Assembly: GCA_002269645.1 (NCBI GenBank) | Contig: NIVC01002973.1 | Location: 1 to 46,061 of the forward strand | From: Macrostomum lignano | Taxonomy: Eukaryota | Direction: 5' to 3' | Length of the DNA stretch: 46,061 bases | Part shown: positions 15,801 through 43,532 of the stretch, one piece after another | Layout of the letters: each line of letters starts with the position of its first letter | How positions within the stretch are numbered: position 1 is the stretch's first letter | Notes under the pieces: generated by a model | Databases searched by the model: none | The model's input: the letters and a program-made list of their open reading frames with translations, nothing else | Told to the model about the DNA's origin: nothing | Position numbers and translations under genes: made by a program

Positions 15801-18800
15801 AGGCTTGTGGCGCTCCTGAGATAGATTACCGCGCCGTAAGCCACCTGAGATGCATCCACAAAGACGTGTAGCACTGCCTTTTTGGTAGGATCAGGCCATA
15901 GACATCGTGGAATTTTCAGCATGCTCAACTCTTCAATCTCCGCTGCCCATTGCGTAGCCTTCGCGGCAACTTGCTGGTCCAAGGGCTCATCCCAATCCGC
16001 TCCATTCTGCCAAATCTCCTGCAGAAGAATTCGCCCGCGAATTGTAAATGGACTCAGAAACCCGCATGGGTCGAACACCATCGCAACGCGCTTGAGCAGC
16101 TGTCGTTTCGACTCAACGGACACTTCCTTCGCACCTGCATTTCCCGTGATCGCGAGCATATCATCATTGGCTGTCCAAGTCACTCCCAACGCCTTCGACG
16201 TCGCCATTTCTCCACGAAGCACGTGCTGCGCTTTCACCGCTCGATCCTCCGGAGCTACTGTCTCCAACACCTCAGACGCGTTCGACATCCATTTTCTCGC
16301 ACGCATGCCGGCTTTTTCCCACAGAGCTGTCAGTTCGCGGCGCAACTGGATAGCTTCATGGACGCTGTTCACTGAGTCCAAACTGTCGTCCATGTAGGTC
16401 GACTTCAGAATGGTTTCTGACGCTCTTGGAAAAGTTTCCTGATGACTCCTAGCATGCTCCTGCGACACGAACTGAGCAAGAAACGGCGAACAATTAACTC
16501 CAAAAACGACACTCTGAAACTCGAATACCTCAAGTTTGCCCGTTTCGGTCCTGTCTCGCCACAAAAATCGAAAGTAGCACCGATCTTCTGGCTTGAGGCG
16601 AATTCTGAGGTACATCTCTTCAATGTCGCAAACGATTGCCACTGGACCGCGACGGAATCGAAGGAGCACTTGAAATAGGTCGTTCTGAAGCTTCGGTCCT
16701 GGAAGGATGACGTCATTGAGACTCACTCCTTGGCAGCGCGCGGAAGCGTCAAACACGATACGGACCTTGGTGGTGTCCTTGTCTTCTCTGATTACCGGAA
16801 AATGCGGCAGGTACCATTCGGTGTTTTGAAGCTCACTGCTGTCTTCGACCTTCTTGAGATAACCTTTTTCCAACTGGCCTTCCAACACCTCCTGATACAC
16901 TTTTGGCAATCCTTCACTCCTCTGCAGTCGCTTCTCCGTGCTGATCAGTCTGCGTTCCGCAGCTTCACGATTGCTCGGCAGAGCACGATTTTGAGACTTC
17001 CATGGAATGGCTACCTGATATCTTCCTTCCACCACCGACATCGACTCCTTGACTACCGCCACAGCACGCTGCTCATCCGCAGTTAACGTCCCTCTTTCGC
17101 GGTTCAGCTCAGCTACATCAGGAACTTCCTCGATCGCCCACAACCTTCGAACCTGACTGTCGACCTGATCTTGACACTCGTGGCAGAGGAACGATTCCCC
17201 GCTCTTGCTGCTTCCCTCATCCGAACCTAACTGCCCGATGCAGGTCCATCCAATAGGAGTCAGTCGAGCTATTGGTTCCCCTGGCATTCCACAGACTTCT
17301 TTGCAAGCCAGATGCATCTCGGCATTGTCGACACCGATAAGCATGTCAACCGTCTTCCGGCTTGATGTTGACTCAAACGGAATGCCTCTCAGATGCGCCC
17401 AGTGCTCCGCCAGTTGACTCCAATCAACTGCCTTCATTCCGCCGGTTACTTTCTCCGCTGTGAAAGCAACAATTTTTGTCTCAAACGCTGCATCGACACT
17501 CCGGACTGTCACCTCTACAGGCGCTGTTTCAAACGACTCGACTCCTCCGTTGAGCACCTTAACGTTTATGCGCTGAAGTTTACCTTCGAGTCCCAGCTCT
17601 GCTGCTACGTCCGCATTGAGGTACGTGCGCGTACTCGCATCATCAAGCAACGCGTTGATCCGAACTTGGCACTCACCAGCCACCAATATCACCGGCACCG
17701 TCCTCAACGCAGTTTCCTTTACGACTTCAGCCAGCATAGTGCGCTCCTTCTTCGTCGCCGCTGATATGTCCTCCGCGGGTTTTCGTGCCTCTCCTTCGCC
17801 GCCTCTCGTCACTGCAGCTGCTGGTTTCGGCTCCCGCTTCTGGTGAAGCATTCGATGGTGTTTTCCTTGGCAACCATCTACGCCACAGGTTCTAGACCGC
17901 CGACAAGCTAAACCAGAGTGATTGACGCCGAGACAATGAAAGCACAGCTTCTTCTCACGAGCAACGGCCCATCGCTTCACTACATCCATCTCCACAAACT
18001 TCGGGCACTCCCAGGCGCCATGGCTTCCTTCACAGACACGGCAGTTTTTCTTGCGCTGCTCATCGGCTCTCGTTGACTCCGCGACAGCGCCAAAATGCGT
18101 TCGAGCTGTTTCCGTGCGCTGCATCCCGCTGAATTTCTTACTTTGCTCCATCTTCCCTGCTCCTGGCCCATTCTGTGCCGCAACTCCATGCACTGCCTCC
18201 ATAGCAACCGTCTGATACTCAGCCTCCCGCAGCAGCCATTGATGAAGAGCGCTGAGCGTGTCATTTCTGCCATTCTCCCCGACCCATCGGTGGTACCGTG
18301 CCAAGGTGTCAGTCGGCAATTTCTTTTGCACGCGAAGATGAAGCAATCCATTGCTGTCTAGTTCAGCTTCACGACCCGCCTCCATCAGATTGATAACCGC
18401 TACATCCACCAGATCAGCCAGCTTCTTCAACTGAGGCGCGCTCTCCGTCACAATGGGCCGAAAACGGTCCAAGTCCTCCAACACTAGCACCAGCCGGCGC
18501 CGCTCTCCTCCATATTCTCTCTCCAACCTATCCAGAGCCGCCTTGTACGCAAATTCAGAATGCCCTAGGTTGGCTATTAGCTTTAGCGCATCGCCCTGCA
18601 GACACTGCCTCAGTTGCAACAGCTTGTACACACGAGAGGAGGGTGCAGCATCTACACACGCGTAAAAGGCCGCCTTCCACCCCTCGTATTGACGCTTATC
18701 ACCTGAGAAACTGGGAATCGCCACCCGCTGCAATTGCCGCCACATGTCCTGACTGACCTGCCTCTCCGCTTCTTCTCTCACCCTCTGTGTACACTCTTGC

Positions 18801-21800
18801 TGAACGATTGGCTCTCTAAGTTGCCACTGTACACTGGCTGACTGTGAGGTGGCTGGCCTGGGTGCAGGGTTTTGTTTTATCGATCGCTCGCCTGACCCCC
18901 CTTCGTGGGCAGTCCAATCAGCTTTTTCACTCCTGTCTGGCGCAGCGCTTACACCCACCTCAGCCCCAATCGACTGTTCAGCCAAACCTGAACCTGGGCT
19001 AGCCCTTTCACACGGGCTCTCTGCCTTAGTGCTGCCAGTAACAATTTTCAATCGCCTCAGCTCCTCTGCCAACTGCTCATGCCGTTGTTGATAGTCTCTC
19101 TCTAGCTCTCTCTGCACCTCTTCCAACTCCAGCGCTCTGTGCTCTGCGGCTTGCACTTTTCGCTGCTCTTCCTCACGCCTCTGCTGTCCTTCAGACTCCG
19201 CCAAGCGATCCTGTTCCTCCCTCTCAGCTGCTTCACTTCTGCTACGATCTTTCCAGAACTCGGTCATCAGACCCACAGTCTCACCGTAGTCCTTTTCAGC
19301 ATTCTCCAGCTCCTTGATCGTTTGGCGACGCAGTGGCAGGTCGTTTCCGGCGAGCTCCAACAGCTTCTCCAGCTCAGTTGTCACCGCCTCGAATAGCTTC
19401 TCCATGAGAGTCGCTTGCTGTTGTACTTCGGCGCCGTCTTGACCACCAGCAGCGAGTTGTTGCACCAGCCGGTTTCTTCCTTTGGTGAATGCGGCCTTGG
19501 CCCTCGTCTTGGCGGCCTTCGCGTCCATCAGCTTGCGTTCTTCCTCGTCCGCCGGCGGGTAGTTCGACTCGAATTCTTCTCCGTCCTTTTGCATTTTTCA
19601 ACCACGCTCTGCTACCAGTTGTTAAATCGACTAAGTCTTCGAAACCGAAAAATAACTAAGTAGGCAAAAATCGGATGCTTGTAGGCTTCAATACCTCTGC
19701 GTTCTCGCGCAGGCAAAACAAAACAACCAAGTTAGCAAAAAACACGCTGACCAAAAATCACGCCCTTTTTAATTATTATTTAACGTGGGGTGGGGTTAGA
19801 AAATTGAGGGGGGTTGGCTCATGTACATTAAATAAAGAGCAAATACATGTACAATTAAATAAGTAAAACCCCAAAAATATGACAAAAAATGAACCTCCAG
19901 AACAAGTAGATTGAGGTAGACTAGTAGATTGGAAGAGGTAAACTAGTAGACAAAGAGAGGTAGATTGGGAGAGGTAGAGTAATAGGTTGGGATAGGTGCT
20001 AGTAGATTGGGAGGGGTGGACTAAGCAGACAGGGAGAGTTAGACTAAGTAGGCAGGAAGAGATAGACTAAAGTGGATTTGGAGAGGTAGACTGGTAAATT
20101 GGAAAAGGTGAACTAGTAGATAAGGAGAGGTAGATTGGGAGAGTTAGACTAAGTAGACAGGGAGAGGGGGAGAGGTAGACTAGCATATTGGGAGAGGTAG
20201 ACTAAGTAGACAGGGAGAGGGGGAGAGGTAAACTAATATATTGGGAGAGGTAGACTAATATATTGGGAGAGGTAGACTAATATATTGGGAGAGGTAGACT
20301 AATATATTGGGAGAGGTAGACTAATATATTGGGAGAGGTAGACTAATATATTGGGAGAGGTAGACTAGCAGATAAAGAGAGATTAGACAGTTAGACTGCT
20401 AGATAGACCAACTCCCTGTCATTAGTGCCATGATGAGTCATCCCAATCGTGTAAAGCGCATTTATGCGCGCCCTGCCTCTTTTGAGTTATGTATTTAGAA
20501 ATGATGCTGATTAATCCAGCATTTTTGAGTCTCTGCCACCTGCTGGCTGCGAGGGCGGTTGGCTTTGACCCTGTTGCATTCCCCTTTCTTTTTTATCTCA
20601 AAAGAGATTAATGATGAGAGAGCTGTTATAGCTCAAAGTAGGCCTAATTGTATGATAATGAGACGTTTGCGAGTATTTTCGAGTACCTTAGCGTTGAGTA
20701 TTACTTTCGAGTTTGTGAGAATTTACAATTATAACAATAGTATATATTAGTAAATTATCAGAGACAGCATGTGAGATTATCAGAGACAGCATGTGAGATT
20801 ATCAGAGACACCATATGAGATTATCAGAGACACCATATGAGATTATCAGAGACACCATATGAGATTATCAGAGACACCATATGAGATTATCAGAGACAGC
20901 ATGTGAGATTATCATAGACAACATGTGACACTATCAGAACACTGTGAGATTTGTAATATCTTTTCTTGAATGTTCCAGTTAATCTGCCTGACTGTTTTTG
21001 GTGTCGATGACAGCCCAGCTGTAGAACCGCCAGCCCCAACTTACCAGCTGGTTCGCTTTGATGGACTGATCACCTGTCTGCCAATTTTTAGCTTGGCATT
21101 CACCTGCCAGACGTGAGCAGCGAATTTCTGTTGGGGTTGGGTGCTAGACTTTTAGTGACTCAGTAACATTTGGTGAATGCAGGTTTAGTAAAATGCATAT
21201 TCAGGTGAATCAAACAGATTTGATGAATGCAGGTTTAGTAAAATGCATATTCAGGTGAATCAAACAGATTTGATGAATGCAGGTTTAGTAAAATGCATAT
21301 TCAGGTGAATCAAACAGATTTGGTGAATGCAGGTTTAGTAAAATGCATATTCAGGTGAATCAAACAGATTTGGTGAATGCAGGTTTAGTAAAATGCATAT
21401 TCAGGTGAATCAAACAGATTTGGTGAATGCAGGTTTAGTAAAATGCATATTCAGGTGAATCAAACAGATTTGATGAATGCAGGTTTAGTAAAATGCATAT
21501 TCAGGTGAATCAAACAGATTTGGTGAATGCAGGTTTAGTAAAATGCATATTCAGGAGAATCAAACAGATTTGGGGAATGCAGGTTTATTGTCTTTGTCGA
21601 TGAGCACCCCGAATTGGGAACCTGTGTTTCCGTATGAATTATGCAACAGATTCGAAATTAAAGCGGTCAAATTAGTAGAGTGCAGATGTGCAGTGACATG
21701 CGATAGAATAATTACGTACTTTAATTTGTAAAATTTCTAGTCATACGCGTGCAAGACTGCGAGTACCCTTAGGCAAATTGGCTTGCTAATTTTAGCGGAA

Positions 21801-24357: not shown

Positions 24358-27300
24358 CCTCTCCTTCATTCATTCCCCCTCCCCTCCTTCATGTCCCTGT
24401 CCCCTCCTTCATTGCCCCTCTTCCCTTCATTCCCCCCTCGCCGCTCCCATCGCAAACCAGTTTCATCCAAGCGACGCCCCTTTCACCCTCGCCCCTCCTA
24501 CCGCGCAGATCGGATCCCTAGGCTACATCGCCTTCGTCAACAGCCCGACGATTCACGGCGACCTCTTGGCGATGTACCCGACCTCGGGTGCCAGCGATTT
24601 CATCAAACTAGGCTTCGTCATGTCAGTCGCTGTCAGCTTTCCTATCATTGCCTTTCCTTGCCGGGTCAGCATCTACAGCTTCATCTATTTACAGGTGGGT
24701 TGTCCGAGCGCTGCTGCTTTGTGCATTTTTAGCCCAAAATTGGCGCTATTTTCTACTCTGAATATTGGCGCTATTTTCTACTCTGAATATTGGCGCCATT
24801 TTCTACTCTGAATATTGGCGCCATTTTCTACTCTGAATATTGGCGCAATTTTCTACTCTGAATATTGGCGCTATTTTCTACTCTGAATATTGGCGCCATT
24901 TTCTACTCTGAATATTGGCGCAATTTTCTACTCTGAATATTGGCGCTATTTTCTACTCTGAATATTGGCGCCATTTTCTACTCTGAATATTGGCGCCATT
25001 TTCTACTCTGAATATTGGCGCCATTTTCTACCCTGAATATTGGCGCCATTTTCTACTCTGAATATTGGCGCCATATTCTAACCTGAATATTGGCGCCATT
25101 TTCTAATTTGAAGATTAGCGCCATTTTCTACTCTGAATATTGGCGCCATTTTCTACCCTGAATATTATTGGCGCCATTTTCTACCCTGAATATTGGCGCC
25201 ATTTTCTACTCTGAATATTGGCGCCATATTCTAACCTGAATATTGGCGCCATTTTCTAATTTGAAGATTAGCGCCATTTTCTACTCTGAATATTGGCGCC
25301 ATTTTCTACCCTGAATATTATTGGCGCCATTTTCTACCCTGAATATTGGCGCCATTTTCTAATTTGAAGATTAGCGCCATTTTGCCATATTCAATCTTTC
25401 TATATACGCGCTGTCTTGCATTAGCTGGAAAATTTTGCGGTTTAATTTCGCATACTCGAGCTATCTATGCACTCATTCTCTGGCTTTGAAAATAGGGTTC
25501 ACGTGGCTAGATATTATACAGCATATAATCTGCTTTAAAGTGTAGGGTCTGAGTTAAATGGGTTGAGTATTGGCCTCTGCTACATACTATAGAGACTATA
25601 TAGAATAAAAAACTGGCCGACCCTAGCAACCACCCCCTGTTTTATCCAGTTTTTGCGCTCAAGCAGGTGGTTTATTGTTCTGTAATACCCCCACGCCTAC
25701 CCACCACTGGCTTATGAGTAGAACTAGATTTAATTTATTAATATATAACTGCTGCTCACTTCTGAGTTGTCAGGGTTTGGCATTTGCTGTAATATCTACA
25801 AGAAACTTTTTGAGTAGCTTTTTTGAGTCAACTCACGATTATGCACTCTATATGACCCCGTGTGTCACCTTACTTATCTGTCTACCATATAAACTACTTA
25901 CTTACTCAGTTGTCTACTCTCGGACCTACTCAGTTGTCTACTCTCGGATCTACTCAGTTGTCTACTCTCTCATCTACTCAGTTGTCTACTCTCTCATCTA
26001 CTCAGTTGTCTACTCTCTCATCTACTCAGTTGCCTACTAGCTGATCTACTCAGTTTTTGTCTCTCTGATCTACTCAGTTGTCTACTCTTTGATCTAGTCA
26101 ATTGTCTACTCTCTGATCTACTCAATTGTCTACTCTCTCATCTACTCAGTTGTCTACTCTCGGACCTACTCAGTTGTCTACTCTCTCATCTACTCAGTTG
26201 TCTACTCTCTGATCTACTCCGTTGTCTACTCTCTGATCTACTCAGTTGTCTACTCTCTGATCTACTCAGTTGTCTACTCTCTGATCTACTCCGTTGTCTA
26301 CTCTCTGATCTACTCAGTTGTCTACTCTCTGATCTACTCAGTTGTCTACTCACTGGTCTAATTTTTACCTACAATTTCTACTTATCTACTATATCATCTA
26401 CTCGCCTATCTACTTTTTTGGCTACTTTACGGTTCAGTCTCCAATTTAAGGTTAACTACTGTACTTTACACCCTAGTGACCCGCGAAGCTATTTAATCAG
26501 CTGACCTAGTCACTGTTGTGCGACTTAGTTTTCTCAGCCAGTCTGACTGATCTGCACTTTTATTTTTCTGCTTGCTCATTTCTCTAGCATGACTAATATC
26601 GAGGTTTTGGGGCGATTCTTACTAAGGTTTGGAGGCAATTCTTACTGAGGTTTGGGGCGATTCTTACTGAGGCTTGGGAGATTCTTACTGAGGTTTGGGG
26701 GCGGTTTATTACTGAGGTTTGGGGGCGGATTATTACTGAGGTTTGGGGCGATTCTTGCTGAGGATTAGGGCGATTCTTGCTGAGGATTAGGGCGATTCTT
26801 GCTGAGGATTAGGGCGATTCTTGCTGAGGATTGGGAGCGATTCTTACTGAGGTTTGGGGGCGATTCTTACTGAGGTTTGTGGGCGATTCTTACTGAGGTT
26901 TGTGGGCGATTCTTACTGAGGTTTGGGGCGATTCTTACTGAGGCTTGGGAGATTCTTACTGAGGTTTGGGAGCGATTCTTACTAAGGCTTGGGAGATTCT
27001 TACTGAGGTTTGGGGGCGATTCTTACTGAGGTTTGGGGAGCGATTCTTACTGAGGTTTGTGGGCGATTCTTACTGAGGTTTGTGGGCGATTCTTACTGAG
27101 GTTTGGGGCGATTCTTACTGAGGCTTGGGAGATTCTTACTGAGGTTTGGGGGCGATTCTTACTGAGGTTTGGGGCGATTCTTGCTGAGGATTAGGGCGAT
27201 TCTTGCTGAGGATTAGGGCGATTCTTGCTGAGGATTAGGGCGATTCTTGCTGAGGTTTGGAGGCGATTCTTACTGAGGTTTGGGGGGGGGCGATTCTTAT

Positions 27301-30300
27301 TGAGGTTTGGGGGCGATTCTTACTGAGGTTTGGGGGCGATTCTTACTGAGGTTTGGGGGCGATTCTTACTGAGGTTTGGGGGCGATTCTTACTGAGATTT
27401 GGGGGCGATTTTTACTGAGGTTTGGGGGCGATTCTTACTGAGGTTTGGGGGCGATTCTTACTGAGGTTTTGGGGCGATTCTTACTGAGGTTTGGGGGCGA
27501 TTCTTACTGAGATTTGGGGGCGATTTTTACTGAGGTTTGGGGGCGATTCTTACTGAGGTTTAGGGGCGATTCTTACTGAGGTTTGGGGGCGATTCTTACT
27601 GAGGTTTGGGGGCGATTCTTACTGAGGTTTGGGGGCGATTCTTACTGAGGTTTGGGGGCGATTCTTACTGAGGTTTGGGCGATTCTTACTGAGGTTTGGG
27701 GGCCGATTCTTACTGAGGTTAGGGGCGATTCTTACTGAGGTTATGGGCGATTCTTACTGAGGTTTGGGGGCGATTCTTACTGAGGTTTGGGGGCGATGTT
27801 GGAGTTAAGTATTGTAGCGAGTTACTCGTACATTTAACTGTTTTCTTTTCTTTGATGCTATTTATAGCAGCTGGTCCCACCCTCTAAAGCTGGTATCTCC
27901 GCCGCTGGTCTGTTATTGCACTGTACCCGCCTTTACGGCAGACTTGTGTTATTGCATTTAAATTAATATATCTTCTGCTTCAGGCTTTTTAAAAAAAGTA
28001 AAAAAAATATCGGAACATTTTTATCTGTTGTCCTTTCTTCTCTGGAATATCTTTGCGACCCTGGATACTGCACTTTTTATCTATATTCGTTAATTAATAT
28101 TATGGTTGATTATATTGTACGTTCGTTTATCTTTAGATCGGAGCCGCTGCAGACTGTGAACTGCAATGCTAAAAAATTTGTGCACTATACAATTTAAGTG
28201 TTTACTTCTGTTAACCCCCCTCTGTTATCCTCAAGTAGTGTCTGCTTTCGGTGACTTCCACTCAGAGTGGTTCCAGTTAATCTGCACCTGATTAACCTGT
28301 TTGTCTGCTCCCTGTTGGCCTACTTTTGACCTCTATTTGTCTCTGGCCACTACCTCTACCCGCCTATCTACCTCTCTTATCTACTCTGCCCTCTCATCCT
28401 ACCCGCCTATCTACCTCTCCTATCTACCCTGCCCTCTCATCCTACCCGCCTATCTACCTCTCCTATCTACCCTGCCCTCTCATCCTACCCGCCTATCTAC
28501 CTCTCCTATCTACCCTGCCCTCTCATCCTACCCGCCTATCTACCTCTCCTGTCTACCCTGCCCTCTCATCCTACCCGCCTATCTACCTCTCCTATCTACC
28601 CTGCCTTCTCATCCTACCCGCCTATCTACCTCTCCTATCTACCCTGCCCTCTCATCCTACCCGCCTATCTACCTCTCCTATCTACCCTGCCCTCTCATCC
28701 TACCCGCCTATCTACCTCTCCTATCTACCCTGCCCTCTCATCCTACCCGCCTATCTACCTCTCCTATCTACTCTGCCCTCTCATCCTGCCCGCCTATCTA
28801 CCTCTCCTATCTACCCTGCCCTCTCATCCTACCCGCCTATCTACCTCTCCTATCTACGTCCTGTCTGCTTTTTCTATCTACCCCTCTCCTGCCTACTTCT
28901 TATTCATTCACCCTTATCTTATTTGCCCTTGTTCTATCTACATTTCTTCTGCCTCTCTTTTTCTCTACCCTTCTCGCATCTACCTCACTACTATATACCT
29001 TCTCTTTCCTATCTGTTTACTCCAGTTCTAAACATTTTTTCATTTCAGCTACATGTACTCTACCGTGTGCGATCCATTTCTGCTTTCTGTTTCTACTTCC
29101 GGCATGTTGGTCCGCGTAAGCCCGACCACAAAATACTGAGGTCGTGTCCTCAGTCATTAAGCTCTCTTTAAAGCCCACAATGCTAGCTACCTGTAAAACC
29201 AATCTCTGGGTTGTGAATGCATTGTTTAGAACTGCTTCTTGTATTGCACTGGGATGACCTCTCTGTTGAGGCCGCTGTGTCAAAAGTGTGCGGAAACTGT
29301 AGACAATGCGATGCATTTACGACTTACGTAATGAATAGCTTTTCAACTATTCTATACACTGTTAAAATCTACTCTCCTTAATCTACTGTCTACTCTACTC
29401 TCCTTTATCTGCTGTCTACTCTAATCTCCTTTATCTACTGTCTACTCTACTCCCCTTTATCTACTGTCTACTCCAATCTCATTTATCTACTGTCTACTCT
29501 AATCTCCTTTATCTACTGTCTACTCTAATCTCATTTATCTACTGTCTACTCTACTCTCATTTATCTACTGTCTACTCTAATCTCATTTATCTACTGTCTA
29601 CTCTAATCTCATTTATCTACTGTCTACTCTAATCTCATTTATCTACTGTCTACTCTACTCCCCTTTATCTACTGTCTACTCCAATCTCATTTATCTACTG
29701 TCTACTCTAATCTCCTTTATCTACTGTCTACTCTAATCTCATTTATCTACTGTCTACTCTACTCTCATTTATCTACTGTCTACTCTAATCTCCTTTATCT
29801 ACTGTCTACTCTACTCCCCTTTATCTACTGTCTACTCCAATCTCATTTATCTACTGTCTACTCTAATCTCATTTATCTACTGTCTACTCTAATCTCCTTT
29901 ATCTACTGTCTACTCTACTCTCATTTATCTACTGTCTACTCTAATCTCATTTATCTACTGTCTACTCTAATCTCCTTTATCTACTGTCTATCTACTCTTC
30001 CTTATCTACTGTCTACTCCATTCTCCTTTATCTACTGTCTACTCTACTACCCTTTGTCTACTGTCTACTCTACTCCCCTTTATCTACTGTCTAATCTACT
30101 CTCCTTAATCTACTGTCTACTCTACTCTTCCTTATCTAGTGTCTTCTCTACTCTCCTTTATCTACTGTCTACTCTACTCACCATTCCTGCATCAGTTTCA
30201 AAACTCACTGTTAACATCCAGCTCTCATTTGTGCAACAAATTTGAGCAGCAAGGTTTATTAAATACAGATGTGATTCAGCATCACGCCTGCTCGCACCCT

Positions 30301-33300
30301 TCCCTCATCTGGTTCGAGCAGAAAAACTCACTAGCAGTTTCCCCCTCTCTGTCTTGGCCTCAAATCTTTTTTTCCGCGAAAGAAAATTTTAGGCGAAGAA
30401 ACACTCGGACATAAAAAACGGCTCACGATTACCTGTGCTCAGGTGTTCTGAGCACCTTCAAATTGCTTCAGTCTGGGATTAATCCCGCCTTTACCGTCTT
30501 TTATTCTTCTTTTGCTTCGATTCGACATCAAAGAGTTGCTTAGTGCCAGCCTCAGCGCTTTTCATCCCGTTTGCGTGCGTCTGATGCTCCAATCATTAAC
30601 AATGTTCGTTCTTGCTAATTTTGGTCTGCTGACAAGCAACGTTTTGCTGAATTGGCTTTCTTGCAATTTTTCGTATTCTAAAAATTACTTTTGTGTACTT
30701 TTGTCTTCATTTTTGTCTTTGCAAAGGTGATTGACGTTGCATGTTCTTTAGTTTGATTGACCTTGATTGACATCTCAGGTGTTTTGTAGTTTGATTGACT
30801 TAGATTGACATCTCAGGTGTTTTGTAGTTTGATTGACTTGATCGACATCTCAGGTGTTTTGTAGTTTGATTGACTTAGATTGACATCTCAGGTGTTTTGT
30901 AGTTTGATTGACTTGATCGACATCTCAGGTGTTTTGTAGCTTGATTGACTTGATCGACATCTCAGGTGTTTTGTAGTTTGATTGACTTGATCGACATCTC
31001 AGGTGTTTTGTAGTTTGATTGACTTGATCGACATCTCAGGTGTTTTGTAGTTTGATTGACTTGATCGACATCTCAGGTGTTTTGTAGTTTGATTGACTTA
31101 GATTGACATCTCAGGTGTTTTGTAGTTTGATTGACTTGATCGACATCTCAGGTGTTTTGTAGTTTGATTGACTTAGATTGACATCTCAGGTGTTTTGTAG
31201 TTTGATTCATTTGATCGACATCTCAGGTGTTTTGTAGCTTGATTGACTTGATCGACATCTCAGGTGTTTTGTAGTTTGATTGACTTAGATTGACATCTCA
31301 GGTGTTTTGTAGTTTGATTGACTTGATCGACATCTCAGGTGTTTTGTAGTTTGATTGACTTGATCGACATCTCAGGTGTTTTGTAGTTTGATTGACTTAG
31401 ATTGACATCTCAGGTGTTTTGTAGTTTGATTGACTTGATCGACATCTCAGGTGTTTTGTAGATTGATTGACTTAGATTGACATCTCAGGTGTTTTGTAGT
31501 TTGATTGACTTGATCGACATCTCAGGTGTTTTGTAGTTTGATTGACTTAGATTGACATCTCAGGTGTTTTGTAGTTTGATTGACTTGATCGACATCTCAG
31601 GTGTTTTGTAGTTTGATTGATTTGATCGACATCTCAGGTGTTTTGTAGTTTGATTGACTTGATCGACATCTCAGGTGTTTTGTAGTTTGATTGACTTGAT
31701 CGACATCTCAGGTGTTTTGTAGTTTGATTGACTTGATCGACATCTCAGGTGTTTTGTAGTTTGATTGACTTGATCGACATCTCAGGTGTTTTGTAGTTTG
31801 ATTGACTTGATCGACATCTCAGGTGTTTTGTAGTTTGATTGACTTGATCGACATCTCAGGTGTTTTGTAGTTTGATTGACTTAGATTGACATCTCAGGTG
31901 TTTTGTAGTTTGATTGACTTGATCGACATCTCAGGTGTTTTGTAGTTTGATTGACTTGATCGACATCTCAGGTGTTTTGTAGTTTGATTGACTTAGATTG
32001 ACATCTCATGTATTTTAGACTGATTGAACTTGATTGACATCTCAGGGGATTTATAGACTGATTTATCTAGATTGACTGTTGACCTTTTTAAAAATTTGAG
32101 TTTAACGCGCACTTCGCATACTACTGAGTTGCTTCATTAATATCCGTTTCCATAGCAACATCGGACTGGCGGTAGCGGCGGAGGCGGCGACCTCACCACA
32201 GGCCGGGTGTTCATTCCCGATGGGAAATTTCGCGGCATAACTTTGGCCATTGTGCTGGGCACGCTTGTTGGAGGTCTGCTAATTCCAAATGGTGTGTTTT
32301 TTGTTTTCTGCTGTGCAACGGGTCTGCGGTAGTGCCGAACTTGGTCTAGGAGGGGTAGACAGTGTCTGGGAGGGGTTAGACAGGATCTGGGAGGAGTAGA
32401 CAGGGTCTGGGAGGTGTTGAACAGGGAGGGTCTTGGAAGGGTTAGATAGGGTCTGGGAGGGGTTAGATAGTGTCTGAGAGGTGTTAGACAGGATCTTGGA
32501 AGGGTTAGATAGGGTCTTGGAGGAGTTAGATAGTGTCTGGGAGGGGTAGACAGGCTCTGGGTGGGGTAGACACGGTCTGGGAGGGGTAGACAGGATCTGG
32601 GTGGGGTAGACAAGACAGGGTCTGGGTGGGGGTAGACAGGGTCTGGATGGTGGTAGACAGGGTCTTGGTGGGGGTAGACAGGGTCTTGGTGGGGGTAGAC
32701 AGGGTCTTGGTGGGGTGGGGGTAGACAGGGTCTGGGAGGGGTAGACAGGGTCTGGGAGGGGTAGACAGGGTCTGGGAGGGGTAGACAGGGTCTTGGTGGG
32801 GGTAGACAGGGTCTTGGTGGGGGTAGACAGGGTCTTGGAGGGGTAGACAGGGTCTGGGTGGGGGTAGACAGGGTCTTGGTGGGGTGGGGGTAGACAGGGT
32901 CTGGGAGGGGTAGACAGGGTCTGGGAGGGGTAGACAGGGTCTGGGAGGGGTAGACAGGGTCTGGGAGGGGTAGACAGGGTCTGGGAGGGGTAGACGGTGT
33001 CTGTGACTCCTGATTGGCCAGGACAAGCTCTGCAACTCTGATTGGTCAATCCTTGACCCGCCTACTCCAGTTGAGTTTATTTTAAGCCTGACTGGCTCAG
33101 TGACAGGCTCGGTGATCTGCTATATCCTGCCAGCTGGCATCTACTTGAACACATTCAGTGGAGTCAGGGCGCGCTGCTGCTCAATTGGCTGCGTGATTAA
33201 ATGGCTTGGTGTGGCCACGCTGTGCATTGGCACAGTGGCTACTCTGTTTGGACCTGGCGGAGGCGGCGAGAGCCACGCGCCAGTTCAAAACCAGCCGCCC

Positions 33301-34703: not shown

Positions 34704-37700
34704 TTAAAAGTTTTTCTGAAACTGAGACTCGGTCTCTCGTTGGCTTTTCCATTTAATTGTCTGCTCGGGGCCTTCGGTTTGGCCCACCGACTCGCTGAAG
34801 TCTCCGCTGGCGATGCAGATTTTCACTATCACCTCGCGCTTGTTCACCTGTTCGCCGGTTTTCTCAGTTGTGATCAGCTTTCTTGTTACAATTCGCTTCT
34901 TGTTCACGAACTTCTTCGTGCTAGACGTTGTCTGGCTGGTGCTTGACTGGTTGGATGAATCCTGCCTTTGAACCTGCTGCTCAGCTTGCTGTTGCACCTG
35001 CAGCTGTTGCTGCATTTTCTGTTGCTTCTTTTGACGCCGCCGAGCGCTTTTGCTGGATGTTGAAGAGCCTGCAGCAGCGCTTGTAGTGCTCTCACTAGCG
35101 GTGGTCGCCGATATTGTCTCCTCCACCTCCGCCTCCGAGTCCTCCTCGTTAGCATTGTTAGCCTCCTGAACAGCTTGCTCAGAGGACATTTCAGCAGATG
35201 CTTCCACCGTTGACTGCTCAACCGAAGATTTTTCTACCGTTGACTGCTCAACCGAAGATGCTTCTACCGTTGACTGCTCAACCGAAGATGCTTCTACCGT
35301 TGACTGCTCAACCGAAGATGCTTCTACCGTTGACTGCTCAACCGAAGATGCTACTACCGTTGACTGCTCAACCGAAGATGCTTCTACCGTTGACTGCTCA
35401 ACCGAAGATGCTTCTACCGTTGACTGCTCAACCGAAGATGCTTCTACCGTTGACTGCTCAACCGAAGATGCTTCTACCGTTGACTGCTCAACCGAAGATG
35501 CTTCTTGCTTCTGATCGTCCGCCAGTTGCTGCTCGAACGGAACACCTGTGTCGGGGCCAAGCGGCTCTATGTGAACGGCTGTCACCTCCTCCTCGATTGG
35601 CTGTTGCTCTGCAGTGGCTGCCGCTCCCTCCATCAAACTGAAATTATGGTGTCATTTATTGCTGACGATGAATCAATGCATGTTTGTAGCGTGATTACAC
35701 TGTTTGGAGCGTGGGGAGATGTTGACTTCAAGTCACTTTGCTCATGGGTCTAAGTGGCGTTTTTTTGCTTATTATACATATCGCAAAGGCTTGAAAATTC
35801 TTCAAAGAGTGACTAGCCACTTGGTATTGGTTGGCCCATCGACTTTATCGGATTGGATCTTGAGTTCTATCCCAGGAAAAATCAAGTAGTCGAAGCGAAA
35901 TCAATAAAAATTCAAACCTTTCGTCTGCCTTTTCCTCCTCTCGTTTCTGATCGTCTAGCATTTGCTGTTCAAATGAGACGCCCGTGCCGGGACCTAACGG
36001 TCGCACGTAAGTGGCTGTCACCACTTCCTCAACTGGCAGTTCAACAGGAGTCTCCGAGGCTTCTGCTGTCTTTCCTTCCATTGAGCTGTAGAAATTTTGC
36101 AATTGGTGAGATCCTTGTAAGCTAAGTGTGGTCCTGACTCCTTTTGTTTATGGTAGGTTTCACTGAATTTTTACTGCTGTTCCTATCGAAGGGCAGAATA
36201 TGTACATCTGTGCATGTACGAGCGTATATCACAGAAGAATAGTGCTTTACCTGGCGGTCACCTCTTCTCGTTTCTGATCTTCAAGCAGCTGTTGTTCGAA
36301 AGACACACCAGTGTCAGGACCTAGCGGCCGCACGTTGACTGCCGTCACCTCCTCCTCGACGTCTCCGAGCTGCTCCGGCAGTTCTGCTCCCGACTGTGCC
36401 AGCTTCTCCCAATCGGCCAGGTTAGCATCTTCCTCCATCATGGCCAGAAAAGTGGCTTCTTGACCGCTTGTCGGTTCTTCGGCAGTGCCTTTCGGCTGTT
36501 CTTGCAGTTGCTTCTCCAGCGACACCTCGGTGCCGGGACCCTCTGGATCCGTGTGCTGCGCCACAATCGGAAGCTCTAGGCCAGCTGCTGGCTCGGCTTC
36601 GTCCATCAGCGACGCCCAGGCTGACACGGAATTCTCATCAATGGCGATGCTAAATCAGTAATAAAACATTTTAAGATTCAGCGGTTAATCTAGGCAACTT
36701 TCAATGCAATTTTTACGGTCTAACCTTGCTACGCCGGCTGTCTCAACGCCTTCCGCTCTGTCTGTCTTGGAGTCCAGCGTGCGCGATGATGCTACTGCCT
36801 GTTTCTCGGCTTGTGTGTGGCTTCGACTGAAATTGTCGGTACACTTTTTACCTCAATAGTAATGAAAAATAACTGAGTAGCACGTTATCTGCGTGTACGC
36901 TTACGTAAATGAAGCCTCTTCAACCTCGAATTGCTGCGGCAAACTCTCTTGCTGCGACTCCCAGCTCCAATCTTGCTGTTGCTGTTGTGCAAAATCGTTC
37001 TGTGGCACCAGCAGTTCCTGCTCCATGCGCTGCTGCTCCAGCAGTTCCTGCTCCATGCGCTGTTGCTCCAGCAGTTCCTGCTCCATGCGCTGTTGCTCCA
37101 GCAGTTCCTGCTCCTTGCGCTGCTGCTCCAGCAGTTCCTGCTCCATGCGCTGCTGCTCCAGCAGTTCCTGCTCCATGCGCTGTTGCTCCAGCAGTTCCTG
37201 CTCCATGCGCTGTTGCTCCAGCAGTTCCTGCTCCTTGCGCTGCTGCTCCAGCAGTTCCTGCTCCATGCGCTGCTGCTCCAGCAGTTCCTGCTCCTTGCGC
37301 TGCTGCTCCAGCAGTTCCTGCTCCTTGCGCTGCTGCTCCAGCAGTTCCTGCTCCTTGCGCTGCTGCTCCAGCAGTTCCTGCTCCTTGCGCTGCTGCTCCA
37401 GCAGTTCCTGCTCCTTGCGCTGCTGCTCCAGCAGTTCCTGCTCCTTGCGCTGCTGCTCCAGCAGTTCCTGTTGATTGCGCTGTTGCTCCAGCAGTTCCTG
37501 CTCCTTGCGCTGCTGCTCCAGCAGTTCCTGCTCCTTGCGCTGCTGCTCCAGCAGTTCCTGCTCCTTGCGCTGCTGCTCCAGCAGTTCCTGTTGATTGCGC
37601 TGTTGCTCCAGCAGTTCCTGCTCCTTGCGCTGCTGCTCCAGCAGTTCCTGCTCCTTGCGCTGCTGCTCCAGCAGTTCCTGCTCTTTGAGTTGTTGCTCCA

Positions 37701-37840
37701 GCAGTTCCTGCTCCTTGCGCTGCTGCTCCACTAGTCCCTGCTCCTGCGTCTGATTTATTTCATGCTGCTGTGTCTGCTGCCACTCTTGCTGCCAGCTTTG
37801 CTGCACAACCTCTTGCTGCCAGCTTTGCTGCGCACCCTCT

Positions 37841-37872
<32 letters not shown>

Positions 37873-39427
37873 TTGTTGTTGCTGCTGTGACTGCTGCCAG
37901 TTTTGCTGCACGATCTCTTGCTGCTGCTGTGACTGCTCGAGCAGCAGCAGATGCCGCACGTACTGCACGGTAGTCTGGCTTTCGCTTGCGCTAGCCAGTT
38001 CCACCAAGCCGCGCCCATCTGCGCACCTGTGCAGTCGGTTGGCCGAAAATTCAATCAGCAGTCGGAGTAGATCTAAGTGGCCTTTCAGAGCGGCCAAAGT
38101 TGCGGCTGAATGGCCATTGTCCTGACAGACGGCGTTCGGATCGGCTCCTGTGTGATGGTTTGCGTAGGATTTAAAAACGTAGAGCTAAATTCAACTATTA
38201 AAGAGAGTACGCTCGTATGTTTTCGCCATCAAGCTCAGTAGCTCGTAGCTATCGTTAAAAACTCACCGGCTTCGAGTAGGAGCTGGGCCACCCTGTAGCT
38301 GGCATTCTCGATGCACAATATCAAAGCCGTCTTGCCGTCCCTATTGGTGGCCGCTTTGTTCGCGCCGTGACGCAGAAGCAGCTGCGCCACCTCGAGGCTG
38401 TCAACCATGCCGCAGATCATCAGGGCGGTGAACTGGCCATTGCCGGCGGCGTTCGGGTCGGCTCCGTTGTCTAGCAGCAGAGCGGCAACGGAGTAGGCGT
38501 TGTTCTTGGCAGTGATCATTAGCGGCGTGACGGTGTCTCGGCGTTGCATCGACACGTTGGCCCCTCGCGTCAGCAGGAGGCTGGCCATCTCGGCGTGGTC
38601 GTACTGGCAGCACCACATCAGGGCAGTTTGGCCGTGCTGCTCGTTGCCGACGTCCGGGTTTGCCCTGGCCTCAAGGAGCACCTGTAGATTGGTATTGAAA
38701 CCTTATTGGATTTTTCTACGAGTGTAAGATTCTTCGTATATTTTATAGCGATTATTTCTGCGTCCATTAATTCATACGGCCTTCGCCTCTTTTTTATTGG
38801 AGGCAGGGGTCTGTGTGCACTTGGGCGCACTTAAAGCGACATTGTTACACAACCGGCGAGAGGCATTGCTGCCCATTCCACCGACTCATTCCGCGGATAC
38901 GTACGCAGTCATACGCACAGGCACACACCCACGCAGGAGTGTACAGCGGCCCTAACCGTATTTATCGTTAGTCCTCAAGGGCGTTAATTGCACGAGAAGA
39001 GCCAAGCCGAGATTCCAATTTAGCCCCAAGTTAATGCGACTGCGCTTGGAATCGAGCCTGGGTCGCTGGCACGTAAGAACGCCGCGCTATAGCACACAAG
39101 GCTACGGCTCCCATCTCCCCCTCTTACCTGAGCCACTCCAATCGAGTTGTACTGCGCCGCAATCATCAGGGCCGTACAGCCGAGAGAATCTTCTCGCGCC
39201 TCAACTTGAGCGCCCTTCTCCAGCAGCAGCAGCGCCGCCTCCCAGCGATCCTTGAACGCCGTGGCTATCAGCGGCGTCCTACGGAATTCGCTCTCGCGCT
39301 CGTTGACATCCGCGCCAGCCGCCAGCATCTGTCGAAGTTCTTCTAGCCGGCCGAAATAGGCCGCCCAGTAGAGGACGTCGGATGTGCTCTCGCCTGGCGT
39401 CTGCTCTCTGCTGCCGCCAAGTCCCAT
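34704..39427 (-). CDS. Ankyrin-repeat protein (8-9 ANK repeats) with predicted N-myristoylation motif, polyQ, 24x EQQRKEQELL, acidic repeat modules and 10x EASSVEQSTV; 7 coding exons, about 1186 aa
   Basis: Exons (minus strand) 39427-39128, 38681-38267, 38147-36905, 36826-36725, 36649-36251, 36085-35918, 35637-34704. All GT-AG, phases 0,1,2,2,2,2, total 3561 nt open. ANK consensus repeats such as GCTALMIAAQYN, GQTALMWCC, TVTPLMITAKNN, GKTALILC...GADPN. N-terminus MGLGGS. Confidence 0.85.
35205..35504 (-). repeat. Coding 30-bp repeat, 10x EASSVEQSTV
   Basis: Direct reading within the last exon. Confidence 0.95.
37009..37728 (-). repeat. Coding 30-bp repeat, 24x EQQR(K/M)EQELL
   Basis: Direct reading: 720 nt within exon 3. 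Confidence 0.95.
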
Positions 39428-41252: not shown

Positions 41253-43080
41253 TTAATTTTTCCCGACGAAAAAAGGAATAAACCGCACAATCAAGTGGAG
41301 CGGAGCAGACTTCTTTAACTCGTACTGTATCAGACTGTCGCAGTTCACGCACTGCTTCTTGGCCCTCTCCTGGCACTGCTGATTCGAACTGCTGTCCAAC
41401 GCCAGTTCCTCGTCCGAGTCGCAGCTGTATTGCCGGTCTGGAACGTCGCTGAACCGGCACAGGCAGCTGTCGCTCCAGTTCAGCAAACTTGGCAGCGGCG
41501 TCAGCTTGATATCAGTCGACAGCTGCTCAAAGTAGCTGCTCAGCCTGGCTACAGTCAGGTCGGTGATTCGTTCTCCCGACTCGGCGAAGTTTTCCAAGTA
41601 GGTCGATATGGCCGCTCTGTTCACCTGCTTGGACGAGATTGTCTCGCGAAGAATGTTCTCGCTCGGCATGAAGTAGTTCGGAATGAAGCCGTTGGCTGCG
41701 CATGTCATGAGCAGCTCGATGGTTGATTCGACAAGCTGCAGCAGTGACAGCTGCTCGTGTTCCGATTGCAACAGAAGCCACAGGTAGCAGGTCTTGGCAT
41801 GGTAGGACTTGAAACCCGCCGGCTTTAGGTAGCGATGGCAGACCTTCTTCAGCAGAGCGTAGCCGGCTCCGAGCTTTGGCGAGAGCTCTTCAATTAGTCG
41901 GCACTCGATTTCGTTGTATGAGTAGCGCCAGGTATGCGAGTACTGCTTGCTTCGGCCTTTGTACGCACCAATGGGAACTATGTGGATCGGAGCGCTTCCC
42001 ACTCGCTTGCTGATGCCAAGAGGGCTGGTGGTCTGTCGGATGACCCACTCTTTCAGCAGCCACGGCCGGTTCCTGCAAACGTATTCATATTTTATGTTTG
42101 ATGGCTGACAAGCGAGGTACCAAGATTACCAAGAGGCTCCAATCCTCGTACATGTATATTTGAATATGGTCAAATCAAGAAATCACTCACTTCAGCGCTA
42201 TGGTGCAGACAAAGTCAACCTCTCGGTGTTCCTCGCGTCCACCCACGATGAAGCAGTAGTCATGCGTCACGGCCGGCCCGTGCTCGTGAATTCGCGACCG
42301 GGTCCCGGGCTCGAGCTTGCCCTGCGACAACAGCGCGTTACTATTCGCCAATCGCCAATCGCTAAATTTCTTGCGAAACTTGCCCGGACTGAGTACTTTA
42401 GAAGTGGCGCTCGCGTCGGTGAAGCGACGTCCACGACGGAACAGTTCGGACTTGCCTTTCCGCCTGTAGATTTTGGCTACCATGGATGGCCGCGTCAGCT
42501 GACAGAAACCGGGCACAATATTTATGACTTCCAGTCCGGCTGGACGCTTCTTAGTCAGCACCAAGTCGATGTCGGACGTGTCCTGGAAGCCCCAAACCTC
42601 GCGGACGCTGCCTTGAAAGCGATAGCCAGAGGGCAACTGGTTGGACCGCATTATCTCGCGACACTCTTCAATAGCCAGCATCTCGTGGTCAACCCGCTCC
42701 TCGATGAGTCTGCTGAGTCGATTCAGCTCGTTTGCATTCGTTCTGGACTTAACTGTGTAGATTGACTGTTTAGCCGCATCGTTCATCGCTTCAGCTCGCG
42801 TGAAGTGCACTACAAACAGCTCCCGTCCATTTGCCGGCATGCATTCCCAATTTTTCAGGCACTCCGGTTCTTTCGGGGATCTTTCGCCGCTTAATTTGTT
42901 AGTGGCATCGCTTTGCTGAGTTGGTTTGCTGCCGCTGGCTGCATTCTGCTTGCCTCTTCGCCTTCTTCCAGAGGGAGCTTTCTCGAGGCTCTTCTGCTGC
43001 TGCCAGACCTTTTGCAGGTGCTGACGCTGTGGACTGGCCAGATCGGCCAAAAATCCCATTACGGGGCCGAACGCCTGCAT
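41253..43080 (-). CDS. Mab-21-fold nucleotidyltransferase / cGAS-like receptor (cGLR), 2 coding exons, about 569 aa
   Basis: Exons 43080-42191 and 42072-41253, joined by a 118-nt GT-AG phase-2 intron in frame. Motifs QGSVRE...DID (42615-42565), VDFV (D at 42216-42214), WRYSYNEIE, FKSYHAKT, NGFIPNYFMPSENIL. The listed ORF start at 43104 is TTG; the first in-frame ATG is at 43080. The true start and the C-terminal end are uncertain. Confidence 0.85.
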
Positions 43081-43121
43081 CTCAGAAATCTCTTTAGCCG
43101 TCAATGGTGGGTAAGATCATG

Positions 43122-43152
<31 letters not shown>
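43122..43152. repeat. (TC)n/(GA)n microsatellite just upstream of the cGLR start
   Basis: Direct reading. Confidence 0.85.
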
Positions 43153-43153
<1 letters not shown>

Positions 43154-43532
43154 GACTTTCCTAAGTTTGTTACTAAATTTATCGCGTTGAGGCGCTTTGT
43201 AGAAATCTATTGACCAATCACCGCTTTACAGCGCTGGTTTTTACTTTTCAAACGAAGCACACATCAGCACGATAAAGTTTGGTAATATCAATTCATTGGG
43301 CGCAGCACGAGCTAATACCAGGCACTCCAGGCCATAGGATGACTAATGGTGTACGAGCTATTTTTAGTAACAGGTATGGGCTACGGGGTACGAGTTTGCT
43401 GGAGTTGGCTCTGGTTCCACTGTCCACCTAGCGTACTATTGACTCCACTGCTCTGCAAGAACGGACCGCTATGCACGCTGCGCTTTTACTTGGAAACTCC
43501 GAGTTAAAAATGAGACGGCTGAGGCACAGGCG

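What the first reader, a model, noticed from the sequence alone, without database searches (positions are those of the whole stretch)
41253..43080. Apparently catalytically intact cGAS-like receptor (cGLR) in a probable flatworm
Seen: GS-VREVWGFQDTS-DID has the same 11-residue spacing as human cGAS GS-YYEHVKISAPN-EFD, including the Glu three residues after GS. A third Asp lies in VDFV, and the Mab-21 C-lobe motifs WRYSYNEIE, SYHAKT and IPNYFMPSENIL are present. There is no vertebrate Zn-ribbon after WRxS, and the N-terminal ~100 aa are basic and low-complexity (RRRRGK) like the cGAS N-tail. Known: cGLRs are nucleic-acid sensors that make cyclic dinucleotides, whereas developmental MAB21L proteins have degenerate active sites. 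My recollection, to be verified, is that cGAS-STING is described as lost in nematodes and flatworms. Inference: a second-messenger immune pathway with unknown ligand, product and possibly a non-STING effector.
Basis: partly seen in the sequence, partly recalled or inferred. Interest (0 to 1): 0.8.

Follow-up and report, generated by a model that had tools for sequence, protein, structure and literature searches.

The report
Divergent orphan cGLR gene in Macrostomum
The region is a real two-exon gene of the flatworm Macrostomum lignano that encodes a very divergent cGAS-like receptor with its catalytic residues in place, but cGAS-like receptors of this species were already catalogued and tested in 2023, so it is a new member of a known family.

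Summary
Window 43080..41253 (minus strand) is a two-exon gene with a 118-nt GT-AG intron. It encodes 569 aa, identical to GenBank 'hypothetical protein BOX15_Mlig007181g1 [Macrostomum lignano]'.

It passes both Pfam Mab-21 thresholds. It aligns to a profile of lophotrochozoan cGLRs at E 1.4e-30. Its AlphaFold2 model matches cGAS structures (Foldseek E 5e-14, target TM 0.63-0.67).

They map to human cGAS G212/S213, E225, D227, D319, R376, S378, E383, K414 and Y436. The vertebrate Zn-ribbon is absent.

One MAFFT alignment shifted the Gly-Ser loop to G152-Y153.

The protein is a long-branch orphan. No orthologue was found outside M. lignano among 1.8 billion cluster representatives, and it is not an MB21D2 orthologue.

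The novelty claim is weaker. 'Lost in flatworms' rests on Schistosoma (2014). Li et al. 2023 say 'most platyhelminthes', list at least seven M. lignano cGLRs and expressed five, none flagged active.

Activity, ligand, product and the presence of STING in M. lignano were not tested. Interest is modest.

The parts
42191..43080 (-). Exon 1, aa 1-297 (first two bases of codon 297). It holds the N-terminal helix plus a basic disordered tail, the spine helix (aa 116-145) and the nucleotidyltransferase N-lobe with all three metal-binding Asp.
   Evidence: ORF and sequence; identical to the NCBI model; AF2 secondary structure.
42073..42190 (-). Intron, 118 nt, GTGAGT...TTTGCAG.
   Evidence: Joining the two ORFs keeps the frame and reproduces the 569-aa database protein exactly.
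41253..42072 (-). Exon 2, aa 297-569 plus the TAA stop. It holds the end of the NTase core, the Mab-21 C-lobe (HhH/H2TH-like) and a 120-aa extension specific to this protein.
   Evidence: Pfam Mab-21_C covers aa 380-451.
42781..43080 (-). N-terminal ~100 aa: a predicted helix at 5-33, then a basic low-complexity disordered stretch that includes RRRRGK (aa 38-43).
   Evidence: pI 10.0, net charge +7; pLDDT <50 for aa 38-99.
42565..42618 (-). F155-Q-G157-S158 activation-loop motif, an 11-residue spacer, then D170-I-D172. These correspond to human cGAS G212/S213, E225 and D227.
   Evidence: hhalign against a profile without the query; hmmalign; MAFFT A2; AF2 model 2 has beta1 at 153-156, a helix at 158-161 and beta2 at 171-177. 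MAFFT A1 instead puts G152-Y153 in the GS columns.
42361..42495 (-). Very basic segment of the N-lobe, aa 196-240 (pI 12, net +13). It includes an insert specific to this protein, roughly aa 197-212.
   Evidence: pLDDT 51-63.
42214..42216 (-). D289 in VDFV, the third metal-binding Asp (human cGAS D319).
   Evidence: This column is Asp in 78 of 80 family members. It maps to cGAS D319 in both alignments.
41904..41930 (-). WRYSYNEIE (aa 345-353). R346, S348 and E353 correspond to human cGAS R376, S378 and E383.
   Evidence: E353 is invariant and W345/R346 are at least 90% conserved in the family.
41790..41807 (-). SYHAKT (aa 386-391). S386 and Y387 correspond to human cGAS S435 and Y436. K390 is invariant in the family.
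41649..41684 (-). IPNYFMPSENIL (aa 427-438), the C-lobe 'PNYFIP..NL' motif.
   Evidence: P428, Y430 and N436 are at least 90% conserved; aligned to MB21D2 CPNYFIPQCNML.
41256..41615 (-). C-terminal extension, aa 450-569: acidic, with six Cys (CxC..C..C..CxxC) and a hydrophobic last 17 residues. No homologue outside M. lignano.
   Evidence: pLDDT mostly below 50.

Best explanation
The gene encodes a highly divergent, lineage-restricted member of the cGAS-like receptor (cGLR) branch of the Mab-21 nucleotidyltransferase superfamily in the free-living flatworm Macrostomum lignano.

Shown here:
- a bilobed cGAS-type fold;
- a Gly-Ser loop (G157-S158) followed by the acidic triad D170, D172 and D289;
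- conservation of the residues that in human cGAS hold the nucleotides (R346, S348, E353, K372, S386, Y387);
- no Zn-ribbon;
- a basic disordered N-tail and a very basic N-lobe segment.

Inferred. Like other cGLRs, it is probably held inactive until a ligand binds the surface behind the active site. An anionic polymer such as RNA or DNA is a reasonable guess given the basic segments. Binding would order the Gly-Ser loop, and the enzyme would then join two NTPs into a cyclic or linear oligonucleotide second messenger that a downstream receptor reads.

Ligand, product, receptor and any immune role are unknown.

The confidence of 0.55 is for the whole statement, including catalytic competence. 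Membership of the cGLR/Mab-21 fold family alone I put at about 0.95.
For: - Pfam Mab-21 and Mab-21_C are both above their gathering scores.
- The best solved relatives by sequence are MB21D2 (1.3e-8), cGAS and cGLR1.
- Among 1.84 billion representatives there are 263 relatives at E<=1e-3. The named top hits are bivalve and annelid Mab-21 proteins.
- The profile of those relatives matches 8gjy cGLR1 at 6.7e-48, MB21D2 at 7e-33 and cGAS at ~1e-29. It matches MAB21L1 at only 3e-18 and MiD51 at 5e-8.
- hhalign of the query alone against that family gives E 1.4e-30 and places FQGS...DID on the GS...DxD columns without gaps.
- AF2 models have a core pLDDT of about 90 for aa 231-450. The Foldseek top 50 are all cGAS, at E 5e-14 and target TM 0.63-0.67.
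- The 1.7-kb reading frame is intact, has a canonical intron and has GC3 of 0.69.
- M. lignano keeps other antiviral genes that many invertebrates have lost: RLRs (PMC8476169) and at least six Mx genes (PMC11789081).
Against: - There is no biochemical or expression evidence.
- The N-lobe is modelled with modest confidence (pLDDT 50-80). One alignment (A1) and the AF2 model built on it put G152-Y153 in the Gly-Ser position, which would mean the Ser is lost. A simple PSSM could not separate the two registers.
- cGAS K362 corresponds to I331.
- No orthologue exists in the databases searched, so purifying selection could not be measured. P0002 is the same or a near-identical locus with frame-shifted stretches.
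- The five other M. lignano cGLRs expressed by Li et al. carry no 'active' note in their screen table. Human MB21D2, which has a complete active site, has no known product. An intact motif therefore does not guarantee detectable activity.
Confidence: 0.55

Rival explanations
1. It is a pseudo-enzyme. It is a Mab-21-fold protein that has lost the Gly-Ser loop (register G152-Y153, with Glu changed to Gln156). It would act as a scaffold or binding protein, as proposed for MiD49/51 or MAB21L1, and make no second messenger.
For: MAFFT on the full 80-sequence set puts G152-Y153 in the GS columns. 'QLPSGYRFQG' resembles 'QLPSGSRVEG' of P0028. AF2 model 1 places beta1 at 148-151. The PSSM slightly prefers this register, 0.05 against -2.35 bits, though both are within noise.
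Against: hhalign and hmmalign against profiles that exclude the query choose G157-S158 without gaps, and so does MAFFT on the 10-12-spacer subset. That register reproduces the published h[QT]GS motif (FQGS) and the modal 11-residue spacer, seen in 28 of 72 relatives. AF2 model 2 in this register has pLDDT 80 for aa 151-160, against 59 in model 1. All three Asp and the nucleotide-contacting residues are kept, which would be unexpected in a long-standing pseudo-enzyme.
Confidence: 0.2
2. It is the flatworm orthologue of MB21D2, the orphan vertebrate cGLR, and shares that protein's still unknown and possibly non-immune role.
For: Human MB21D2 (7lt1) is the best solved-structure hit by sequence, at 37 bits against 18.6 for cGAS. 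Both proteins have G[SG]-V-R-E after beta1.
Against: When human MB21D2 is searched against the query together with its 149 listed relatives, the query ranks 99th (38.7 bits). Lophotrochozoan proteins reach 90-180 bits. In the NJ tree the query joins MB21D2 in only 8% of bootstraps. MB21D2 has a GG loop and a longer spacer.
Confidence: 0.07
3. It is a decaying or unexpressed lineage-specific duplicate. Its long branch would then reflect relaxed constraint, and it would have no present function.
For: It sits on an extreme long branch, with at most 28-30% identity to anything outside the species. The scaffold is repeat-rich and carries a young retrotransposon. The second database copy, P0002, has frame-shifted stretches.
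Against: The 569-codon frame is uninterrupted, the splice sites are canonical and GC3 is high. The divergence spares exactly the fold-defining and catalytic residues. Outside its frame-shifted stretches, P0002 differs by only about five substitutions, so those stretches are more likely assembly or gene-model errors than decay.
Confidence: 0.1

Closest known systems
Lophotrochozoan cGLR radiation (bivalve and annelid Mab-21 proteins; the solved example is 8gjy 'cGAS-like receptor 1' from Li et al. 2023)
   Same: Same fold. Same GSxxE...SDxD...D motif with a 10-11-residue spacer. Same WRxS..E, SYHxKT and PNYFIP..NL motifs. No Zn-ribbon. The DxD-to-Asp distance of 116 compares with a family median of 113.
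   Different: Only 20-30% identity, on a long branch with no stable sister (best bootstrap 0.2). The Gly of 'EG' is Val162. It has its own basic insert at about aa 197-212 and a unique 120-aa C-terminal extension.
Human MB21D2 (PDB 7lt1), orphan cGLR
   Same: It is the best solved-structure match by sequence. The two share G[SG]VRE, the Asp of the third strand, WRLS/WRYS, and PNYFIP/PNYFMP.
   Different: It is not a reciprocal best match (rank 99 of 149). MB21D2 has Gly-Gly and a longer loop before the acidic pair.
Vertebrate cGAS
   Same: Foldseek E 5e-14. The GS-x11-[DE]x[DE] spacing is identical. Equivalents of E225, D227, D319, R376, S378, E383, K414 and Y436 are present, and both have a basic disordered N-tail.
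   Different: 15-19% identity. It has no Zn-ribbon (H390, C396, C397, C404). K362 corresponds to Ile. Nothing is known about DNA binding.
The M. lignano cGLRs already catalogued by Li et al. 2023 (PAA86972.1, PAA45980.1, PAA57558.1, PAA93208.1, PAA68676.1, PAA67649.1, PAA58690.1)
   Same: Same species, same superfamily, and a GSxxE/DGWG-type loop.
   Different: Only 22-28% identity over the C-lobe. Those proteins form their own clade away from the query. At least four of them carry N-terminal ankyrin repeats, whereas this protein has none. An ankyrin-repeat gene does lie next to it.

Membership tests
cGLR (cGAS-like receptor; Slavik 2021, Li 2023) | Bilobed Mab-21/cGAS nucleotidyltransferase fold | tested here: met
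   Pfam PF03281 and PF20266 are above their cut-offs. hhalign E 1.4e-30. AF2 plus Foldseek: the top 50 hits are cGAS, E 5e-14, target TM 0.63-0.67.
cGLR (cGAS-like receptor; Slavik 2021, Li 2023) | h[QT]GS activation loop, 8-20 residues before [DE]h[DE]h | tested here: met
   F155-Q-G-S158, then 11 residues, then D170-I-D172-L. Supported by hhalign, hmmalign, MAFFT A2 and AF2 model 2. One alignment (A1) prefers G152-Y153, so some doubt remains.
cGLR (cGAS-like receptor; Slavik 2021, Li 2023) | Third acidic residue h[DE]h, 50-90 residues further on | tested here: inconclusive
   V288-D289-F290 is present and aligns to cGAS D319. The spacer is 114 residues, outside the 50-90 quoted in the methods of Li et al.. 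It is typical of the lophotrochozoan relatives, whose median is 113.
cGLR (cGAS-like receptor; Slavik 2021, Li 2023) | Ligand-stimulated synthesis of a nucleotide second messenger | not testable with these tools
   Needs recombinant protein and NTP assays.
cGLR (cGAS-like receptor; Slavik 2021, Li 2023) | A cognate receptor (STING or other) in the same genome | not tested
   No tool here can search the M. lignano genome. M. lignano is absent from Li et al.'s per-species cGLR/STING table, where six parasitic flatworms score 0,0. The planarian S. mediterranea lacks both cGAS and STING.
Vertebrate cGAS orthologue | Zn-ribbon (H390, C396, C397, C404) used for DNA binding | tested here: not met
   These positions fall on gaps or on Leu/Pro in the query.
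MB21D2 orthologue | Reciprocal closest similarity or clade membership | tested here: not met
   The query ranks 99th of 149 against human MB21D2. It is sister to MB21D2 in 8% of NJ bootstraps.
MAB21L1/2 (developmental Mab-21) | Close similarity to the highly conserved MAB21L proteins | tested here: not met
   No phmmer hit to 5eog at E<=10. The family profile scores 5eog at 2.8e-18, against 6.7e-48 for cGLR1.
MiD49/MiD51 | Similarity across the fold to the MiD proteins | tested here: not met
   No phmmer hit at E<=10. The family profile matches only the C-lobe, at 5e-8 and 2e-4. ITPRIP and TMEM102 have no solved structures in the hit list and were not tested separately.

The most novel reading that the evidence does not exclude
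M. lignano may have kept several catalytically competent cGLR lineages, including this long-branch one with its own basic insert and Cys-containing C-terminal extension, in a phylum where STING has been reported lost. If so, its product would be read by a receptor that is not STING, or the enzyme would sense a ligand class not yet known for cGLRs.
Probability: 0.1. Interest if true: 0.6.

Novelty: new member of a known kind. Interest (0 to 1): 0.3.

Why it matters
The gene adds one more lineage, a very divergent one, to the cGLR repertoire of the only flatworm group known to have kept such genes. That could help date when cGLR signalling was lost in planarians and parasitic flatworms.

M. lignano is transgenic-tractable, so it is a workable system for asking what an orphan cGLR senses and what reads its product.

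The finding does not overturn the current picture. Li et al. 2023 already state that only 'most' platyhelminths lack cGLRs, and they expressed M. lignano enzymes.

Tried and rejected
- **Word-indexed protein search.** It found only the protein itself and P0002, so it was useless for distant relatives. For the same reason I ran no further search on STING: a negative result would mean nothing.
- **P0002 as a paralogue for a selection test.** It is the same or a near-identical locus with frame-shifted stretches, and its DNA is not on record. No dN/dS could be computed.
- **N-lobe alone against PDB sequences.** Only chance hits.
- **Local HMMs and a gapless PSSM of the GS region.** They could not discriminate the two registers; both scores lie within the shuffle noise.
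- **MAFFT A1 register G152-Y153 and the AF2 model built on it.** Rejected in favour of G157-S158 after hhalign, hmmalign, MAFFT A2 and AF2 model 2. AF2 follows the alignment it is given, so the two models are not independent evidence. Only the difference in local confidence counts.
- **NJ phylogeny.** No supported sister group. It is used only to reject MB21D2 orthology and membership of the Ank-cGLR clade of M. lignano.
- **Whether this exact protein is in Li et al.'s Table S1.** The stored copies of that table are truncated, so this could not be settled.
- **Model coordinates.** They are not exposed, so I could not measure distances in the active site.

Full report
**1. What is in the sequence**

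Two minus-strand ORFs, 43104..42187 and 42002..41253, are separated by a 118-nt stretch that begins GTGAGT and ends TTTGCAG. Splicing 42191|42072 keeps the frame. It gives a 1710-nt CDS from the ATG at 43080 to the TAA at 41255-41253, encoding 569 aa.

This protein is 100% identical over its full length to NCBI 'hypothetical protein BOX15_Mlig007181g1 [Macrostomum lignano]'. The record's contig length of 46,061 equals the window length, so the window is a whole scaffold of that flatworm.

The CDS is 55% GC with GC3 of 0.69, and the intron is 38% GC. No second copy lies in the window.

**2. Is it a cGAS/Mab-21 protein?**

Yes.

- Pfam Mab-21 (32.2 bits) and Mab-21_C (28.1 bits) both exceed the 24.1-bit gathering score. 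They cover only aa 226-451.
- By sequence, the best solved structures are human MB21D2 (1.3e-8), pig cGAS (0.0056) and a cGLR1 (0.011). MAB21L1 and MiD49/51 give no hit at E<=10.
- A filter-free phmmer scan of 1.84 billion cluster representatives found 263 relatives at E<=1e-3. Only one is closer than 1e-13: P0002, from M. lignano itself.
- The named top hits come from a bivalve (Sinanodonta) and an annelid (Lamellibrachia).
- A profile of these relatives matches 8gjy cGLR1 at 6.7e-48, MB21D2 at 7e-33, cGAS at about 1e-29, MAB21L1 at 3e-18 and MiD51 at 5e-8.
- The query alone, aligned by hhalign to a family profile built without it, gives probability 99.85 and E 1.4e-30 over aa 152-463.
- Two AlphaFold2 models (mean pLDDT 67 and 65, pTM 0.62) have a confident core, with pLDDT about 90 for aa 231-450. 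They show a long spine helix at 116-145 and disordered segments at 38-99 and about 487-524.
- Foldseek of model 1 against the PDB returns only cGAS entries in the top 50, at E 5e-14 to 5e-12 and target-normalised TM 0.55-0.67.

**3. Is the active site intact?**

D170, D172 and D289 sit in columns that are Asp in at least 90% of 80 family members. They align to human cGAS E225, D227 and D319 in both alignments I made.

The same mapping gives these further equivalences:

| Human cGAS | Query |
|---|---|
| R376 | R346 |
| S378 | S348 |
| E383 | E353 |
| K414 | K372 |
| S435 | S386 |
| Y436 | Y387 |
| K362 | I331 (not conserved) |

The four Zn-ribbon ligands have no counterpart.

The one real uncertainty is the Gly-Ser loop.

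- MAFFT on all 80 sequences put the family GS on G152-Y153. That would mean the Ser is lost. The AF2 model built on that alignment has beta1 at 148-151 and low confidence around the loop: pLDDT 59 for aa 151-160 and below 50 for 158-165.
- The spacer between GS and DxD varies from 10 to 48 residues in the family, with 11 the most common value (28 of 72). Both registers are therefore formally possible, and a simple PSSM could not separate them.
  - hhalign against a profile that excludes the query aligns FQGSVREVWGFQDTSDIDL gaplessly to tGS~~EGl~~~~~SD~D~M.
  - hmmalign does the same.
  - MAFFT on the 10-12-spacer subset makes G157 invariant and S158 at least 90% conserved.
  - The AF2 model on that alignment shows the canonical beta1 (153-156), Gly-Ser, helix (158-161) and beta2 (171-177), with pLDDT 80 for aa 151-160.
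- This register also reproduces the published h[QT]GS-X8-20-[DE]h[DE]h pattern as FQGS-X11-DIDL.

I put about 75-80% on this register. The AF2 models follow their input alignments and are not independent of them.

The distance from DxD to the third Asp is 114-116 residues. That exceeds the 50-90 quoted by Li et al. but equals the median of the relatives.

**4. Where it sits in the family**

It is a long-branch orphan.

- P0002 differs by a handful of substitutions plus two stretches that read like another frame of the same DNA. It is the same or a duplicated locus from another assembly, not an orthologue. Its DNA is not on record.
- Searched with human MB21D2, the query ranks 99th of 149. Lophotrochozoan proteins score 90-180 bits against its 38.7.
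- A bootstrap NJ tree on 270 profile columns places the query inside the lophotrochozoan radiation without a stable sister. The best support is 0.2, and support for MB21D2 as sister is 0.08. The query is apart from the five M. lignano cGLRs of Li et al., which cluster together. It shares only 22-28% identity with those over the C-lobe.

Features peculiar to this protein:

- a basic N-tail (pI 10);
- a very basic N-lobe segment, aa 196-240 (pI 12, net +13), which contains an insert absent from relatives;
- an acidic, Cys-containing C-terminal extension of 120 aa with no homologue.

**5. What is already known**

Wu et al. [quoted passage not shown]

Li et al. [quoted passage not shown]

- Their screen table contains five M. 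lignano proteins, samples 89-93.
- Their domain table lists further M. lignano accessions, several with N-terminal ankyrin repeats.
- Their per-species cGLR/STING table scores six parasitic flatworms 0,0 and does not include M. lignano.
- The same group describes MB21D2 as an orphan cGLR with a complete putative active site and no known ligand.

A 2026 study found neither cGAS nor STING in the planarian Schmidtea (PMC13563047). M. lignano also retains RLRs and at least six Mx genes.

I could not determine whether BOX15_Mlig007181g1 itself is in Li et al.'s full list, because the stored tables are truncated.

**6. Verdict**

'Apparently catalytically intact' is the better-supported reading.

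The most likely mechanism is that of a ligand-gated cGLR that makes a nucleotide second messenger. That part is inference. No activity, ligand, product, receptor or expression was tested here, and intact motifs do not guarantee measurable activity, as MB21D2 and the other M. lignano enzymes show.

cGLRs of this species are already in the literature, so this is a new and unusually divergent member of a known kind. The only route to higher interest is absence of STING from M. lignano, which remains to be checked.

Noticed in passing
window 13009-19904: A full-length, apparently young BEL/Pao LTR retrotransposon. Its 189-nt LTRs at 13009-13197 and 19716-19904 are 99% identical. They flank an uninterrupted 1929-aa gag-pol ORF at 13805-19594 (minus strand) with Peptidase_A17, RVT_1, Integrase_H2C2, DUF1759 and DUF5641 domains.
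   Followed up: partly
window 36901-39427 (minus strand): An ankyrin-repeat gene lies directly downstream of the cGLR gene on the same strand. Its ORFs are 39427-39020, 38681-38235 and 38097-36901. The last ORF is a Gln/Glu-rich repeat with a 30-nt period. Li et al.'s domain table lists N-terminal ankyrin repeats fused to several other M. lignano cGLRs. The adjacency may be chance.
   Followed up: partly
window 12421-12849 (+): An exon-like ORF matches the amino-acid transporter family Aa_trans (PF01490, 7e-13). It lies just upstream of the retrotransposon, so the element may sit in an intron of that gene or next to it.
   Followed up: no
window ~1540-33000 and 35196-37745: About 30 minisatellite arrays with periods of 15-112 nt fill much of the scaffold. 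Examples: 1894-3590 (31 nt x 55), 4877-6204 (22 nt x 60), 6724-9190 (28 nt), 26601-27797 (23 nt x 53) and 30742-32046 (37 nt x 35). Several produce long spurious ORFs in the mechanical ORF list.
   Followed up: no
window 41256-41615 (aa 450-569 of the cGLR): The C-terminal extension has six Cys arranged as CxC..C..C..CxxC (C500, C502, C514, C530, C538, C541). It ends in a hydrophobic stretch, LHLIVRFIPFFVG. It has no homologue outside M. lignano and low model confidence. A metal site or a membrane-association element is conceivable but untested.
   Followed up: no
proteins P0003 and P0006 (relatives, not in the window): The closest non-flatworm relatives include proteins of 1139 and 1466 aa that each contain two Mab-21 domains in tandem. 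These are either true tandem-domain cGLRs or fused gene models.
   Followed up: no
window 43121-43165: A (GAGAGAGAGATA)-like microsatellite lies about 40-85 nt upstream of the cGLR start codon.
   Followed up: no
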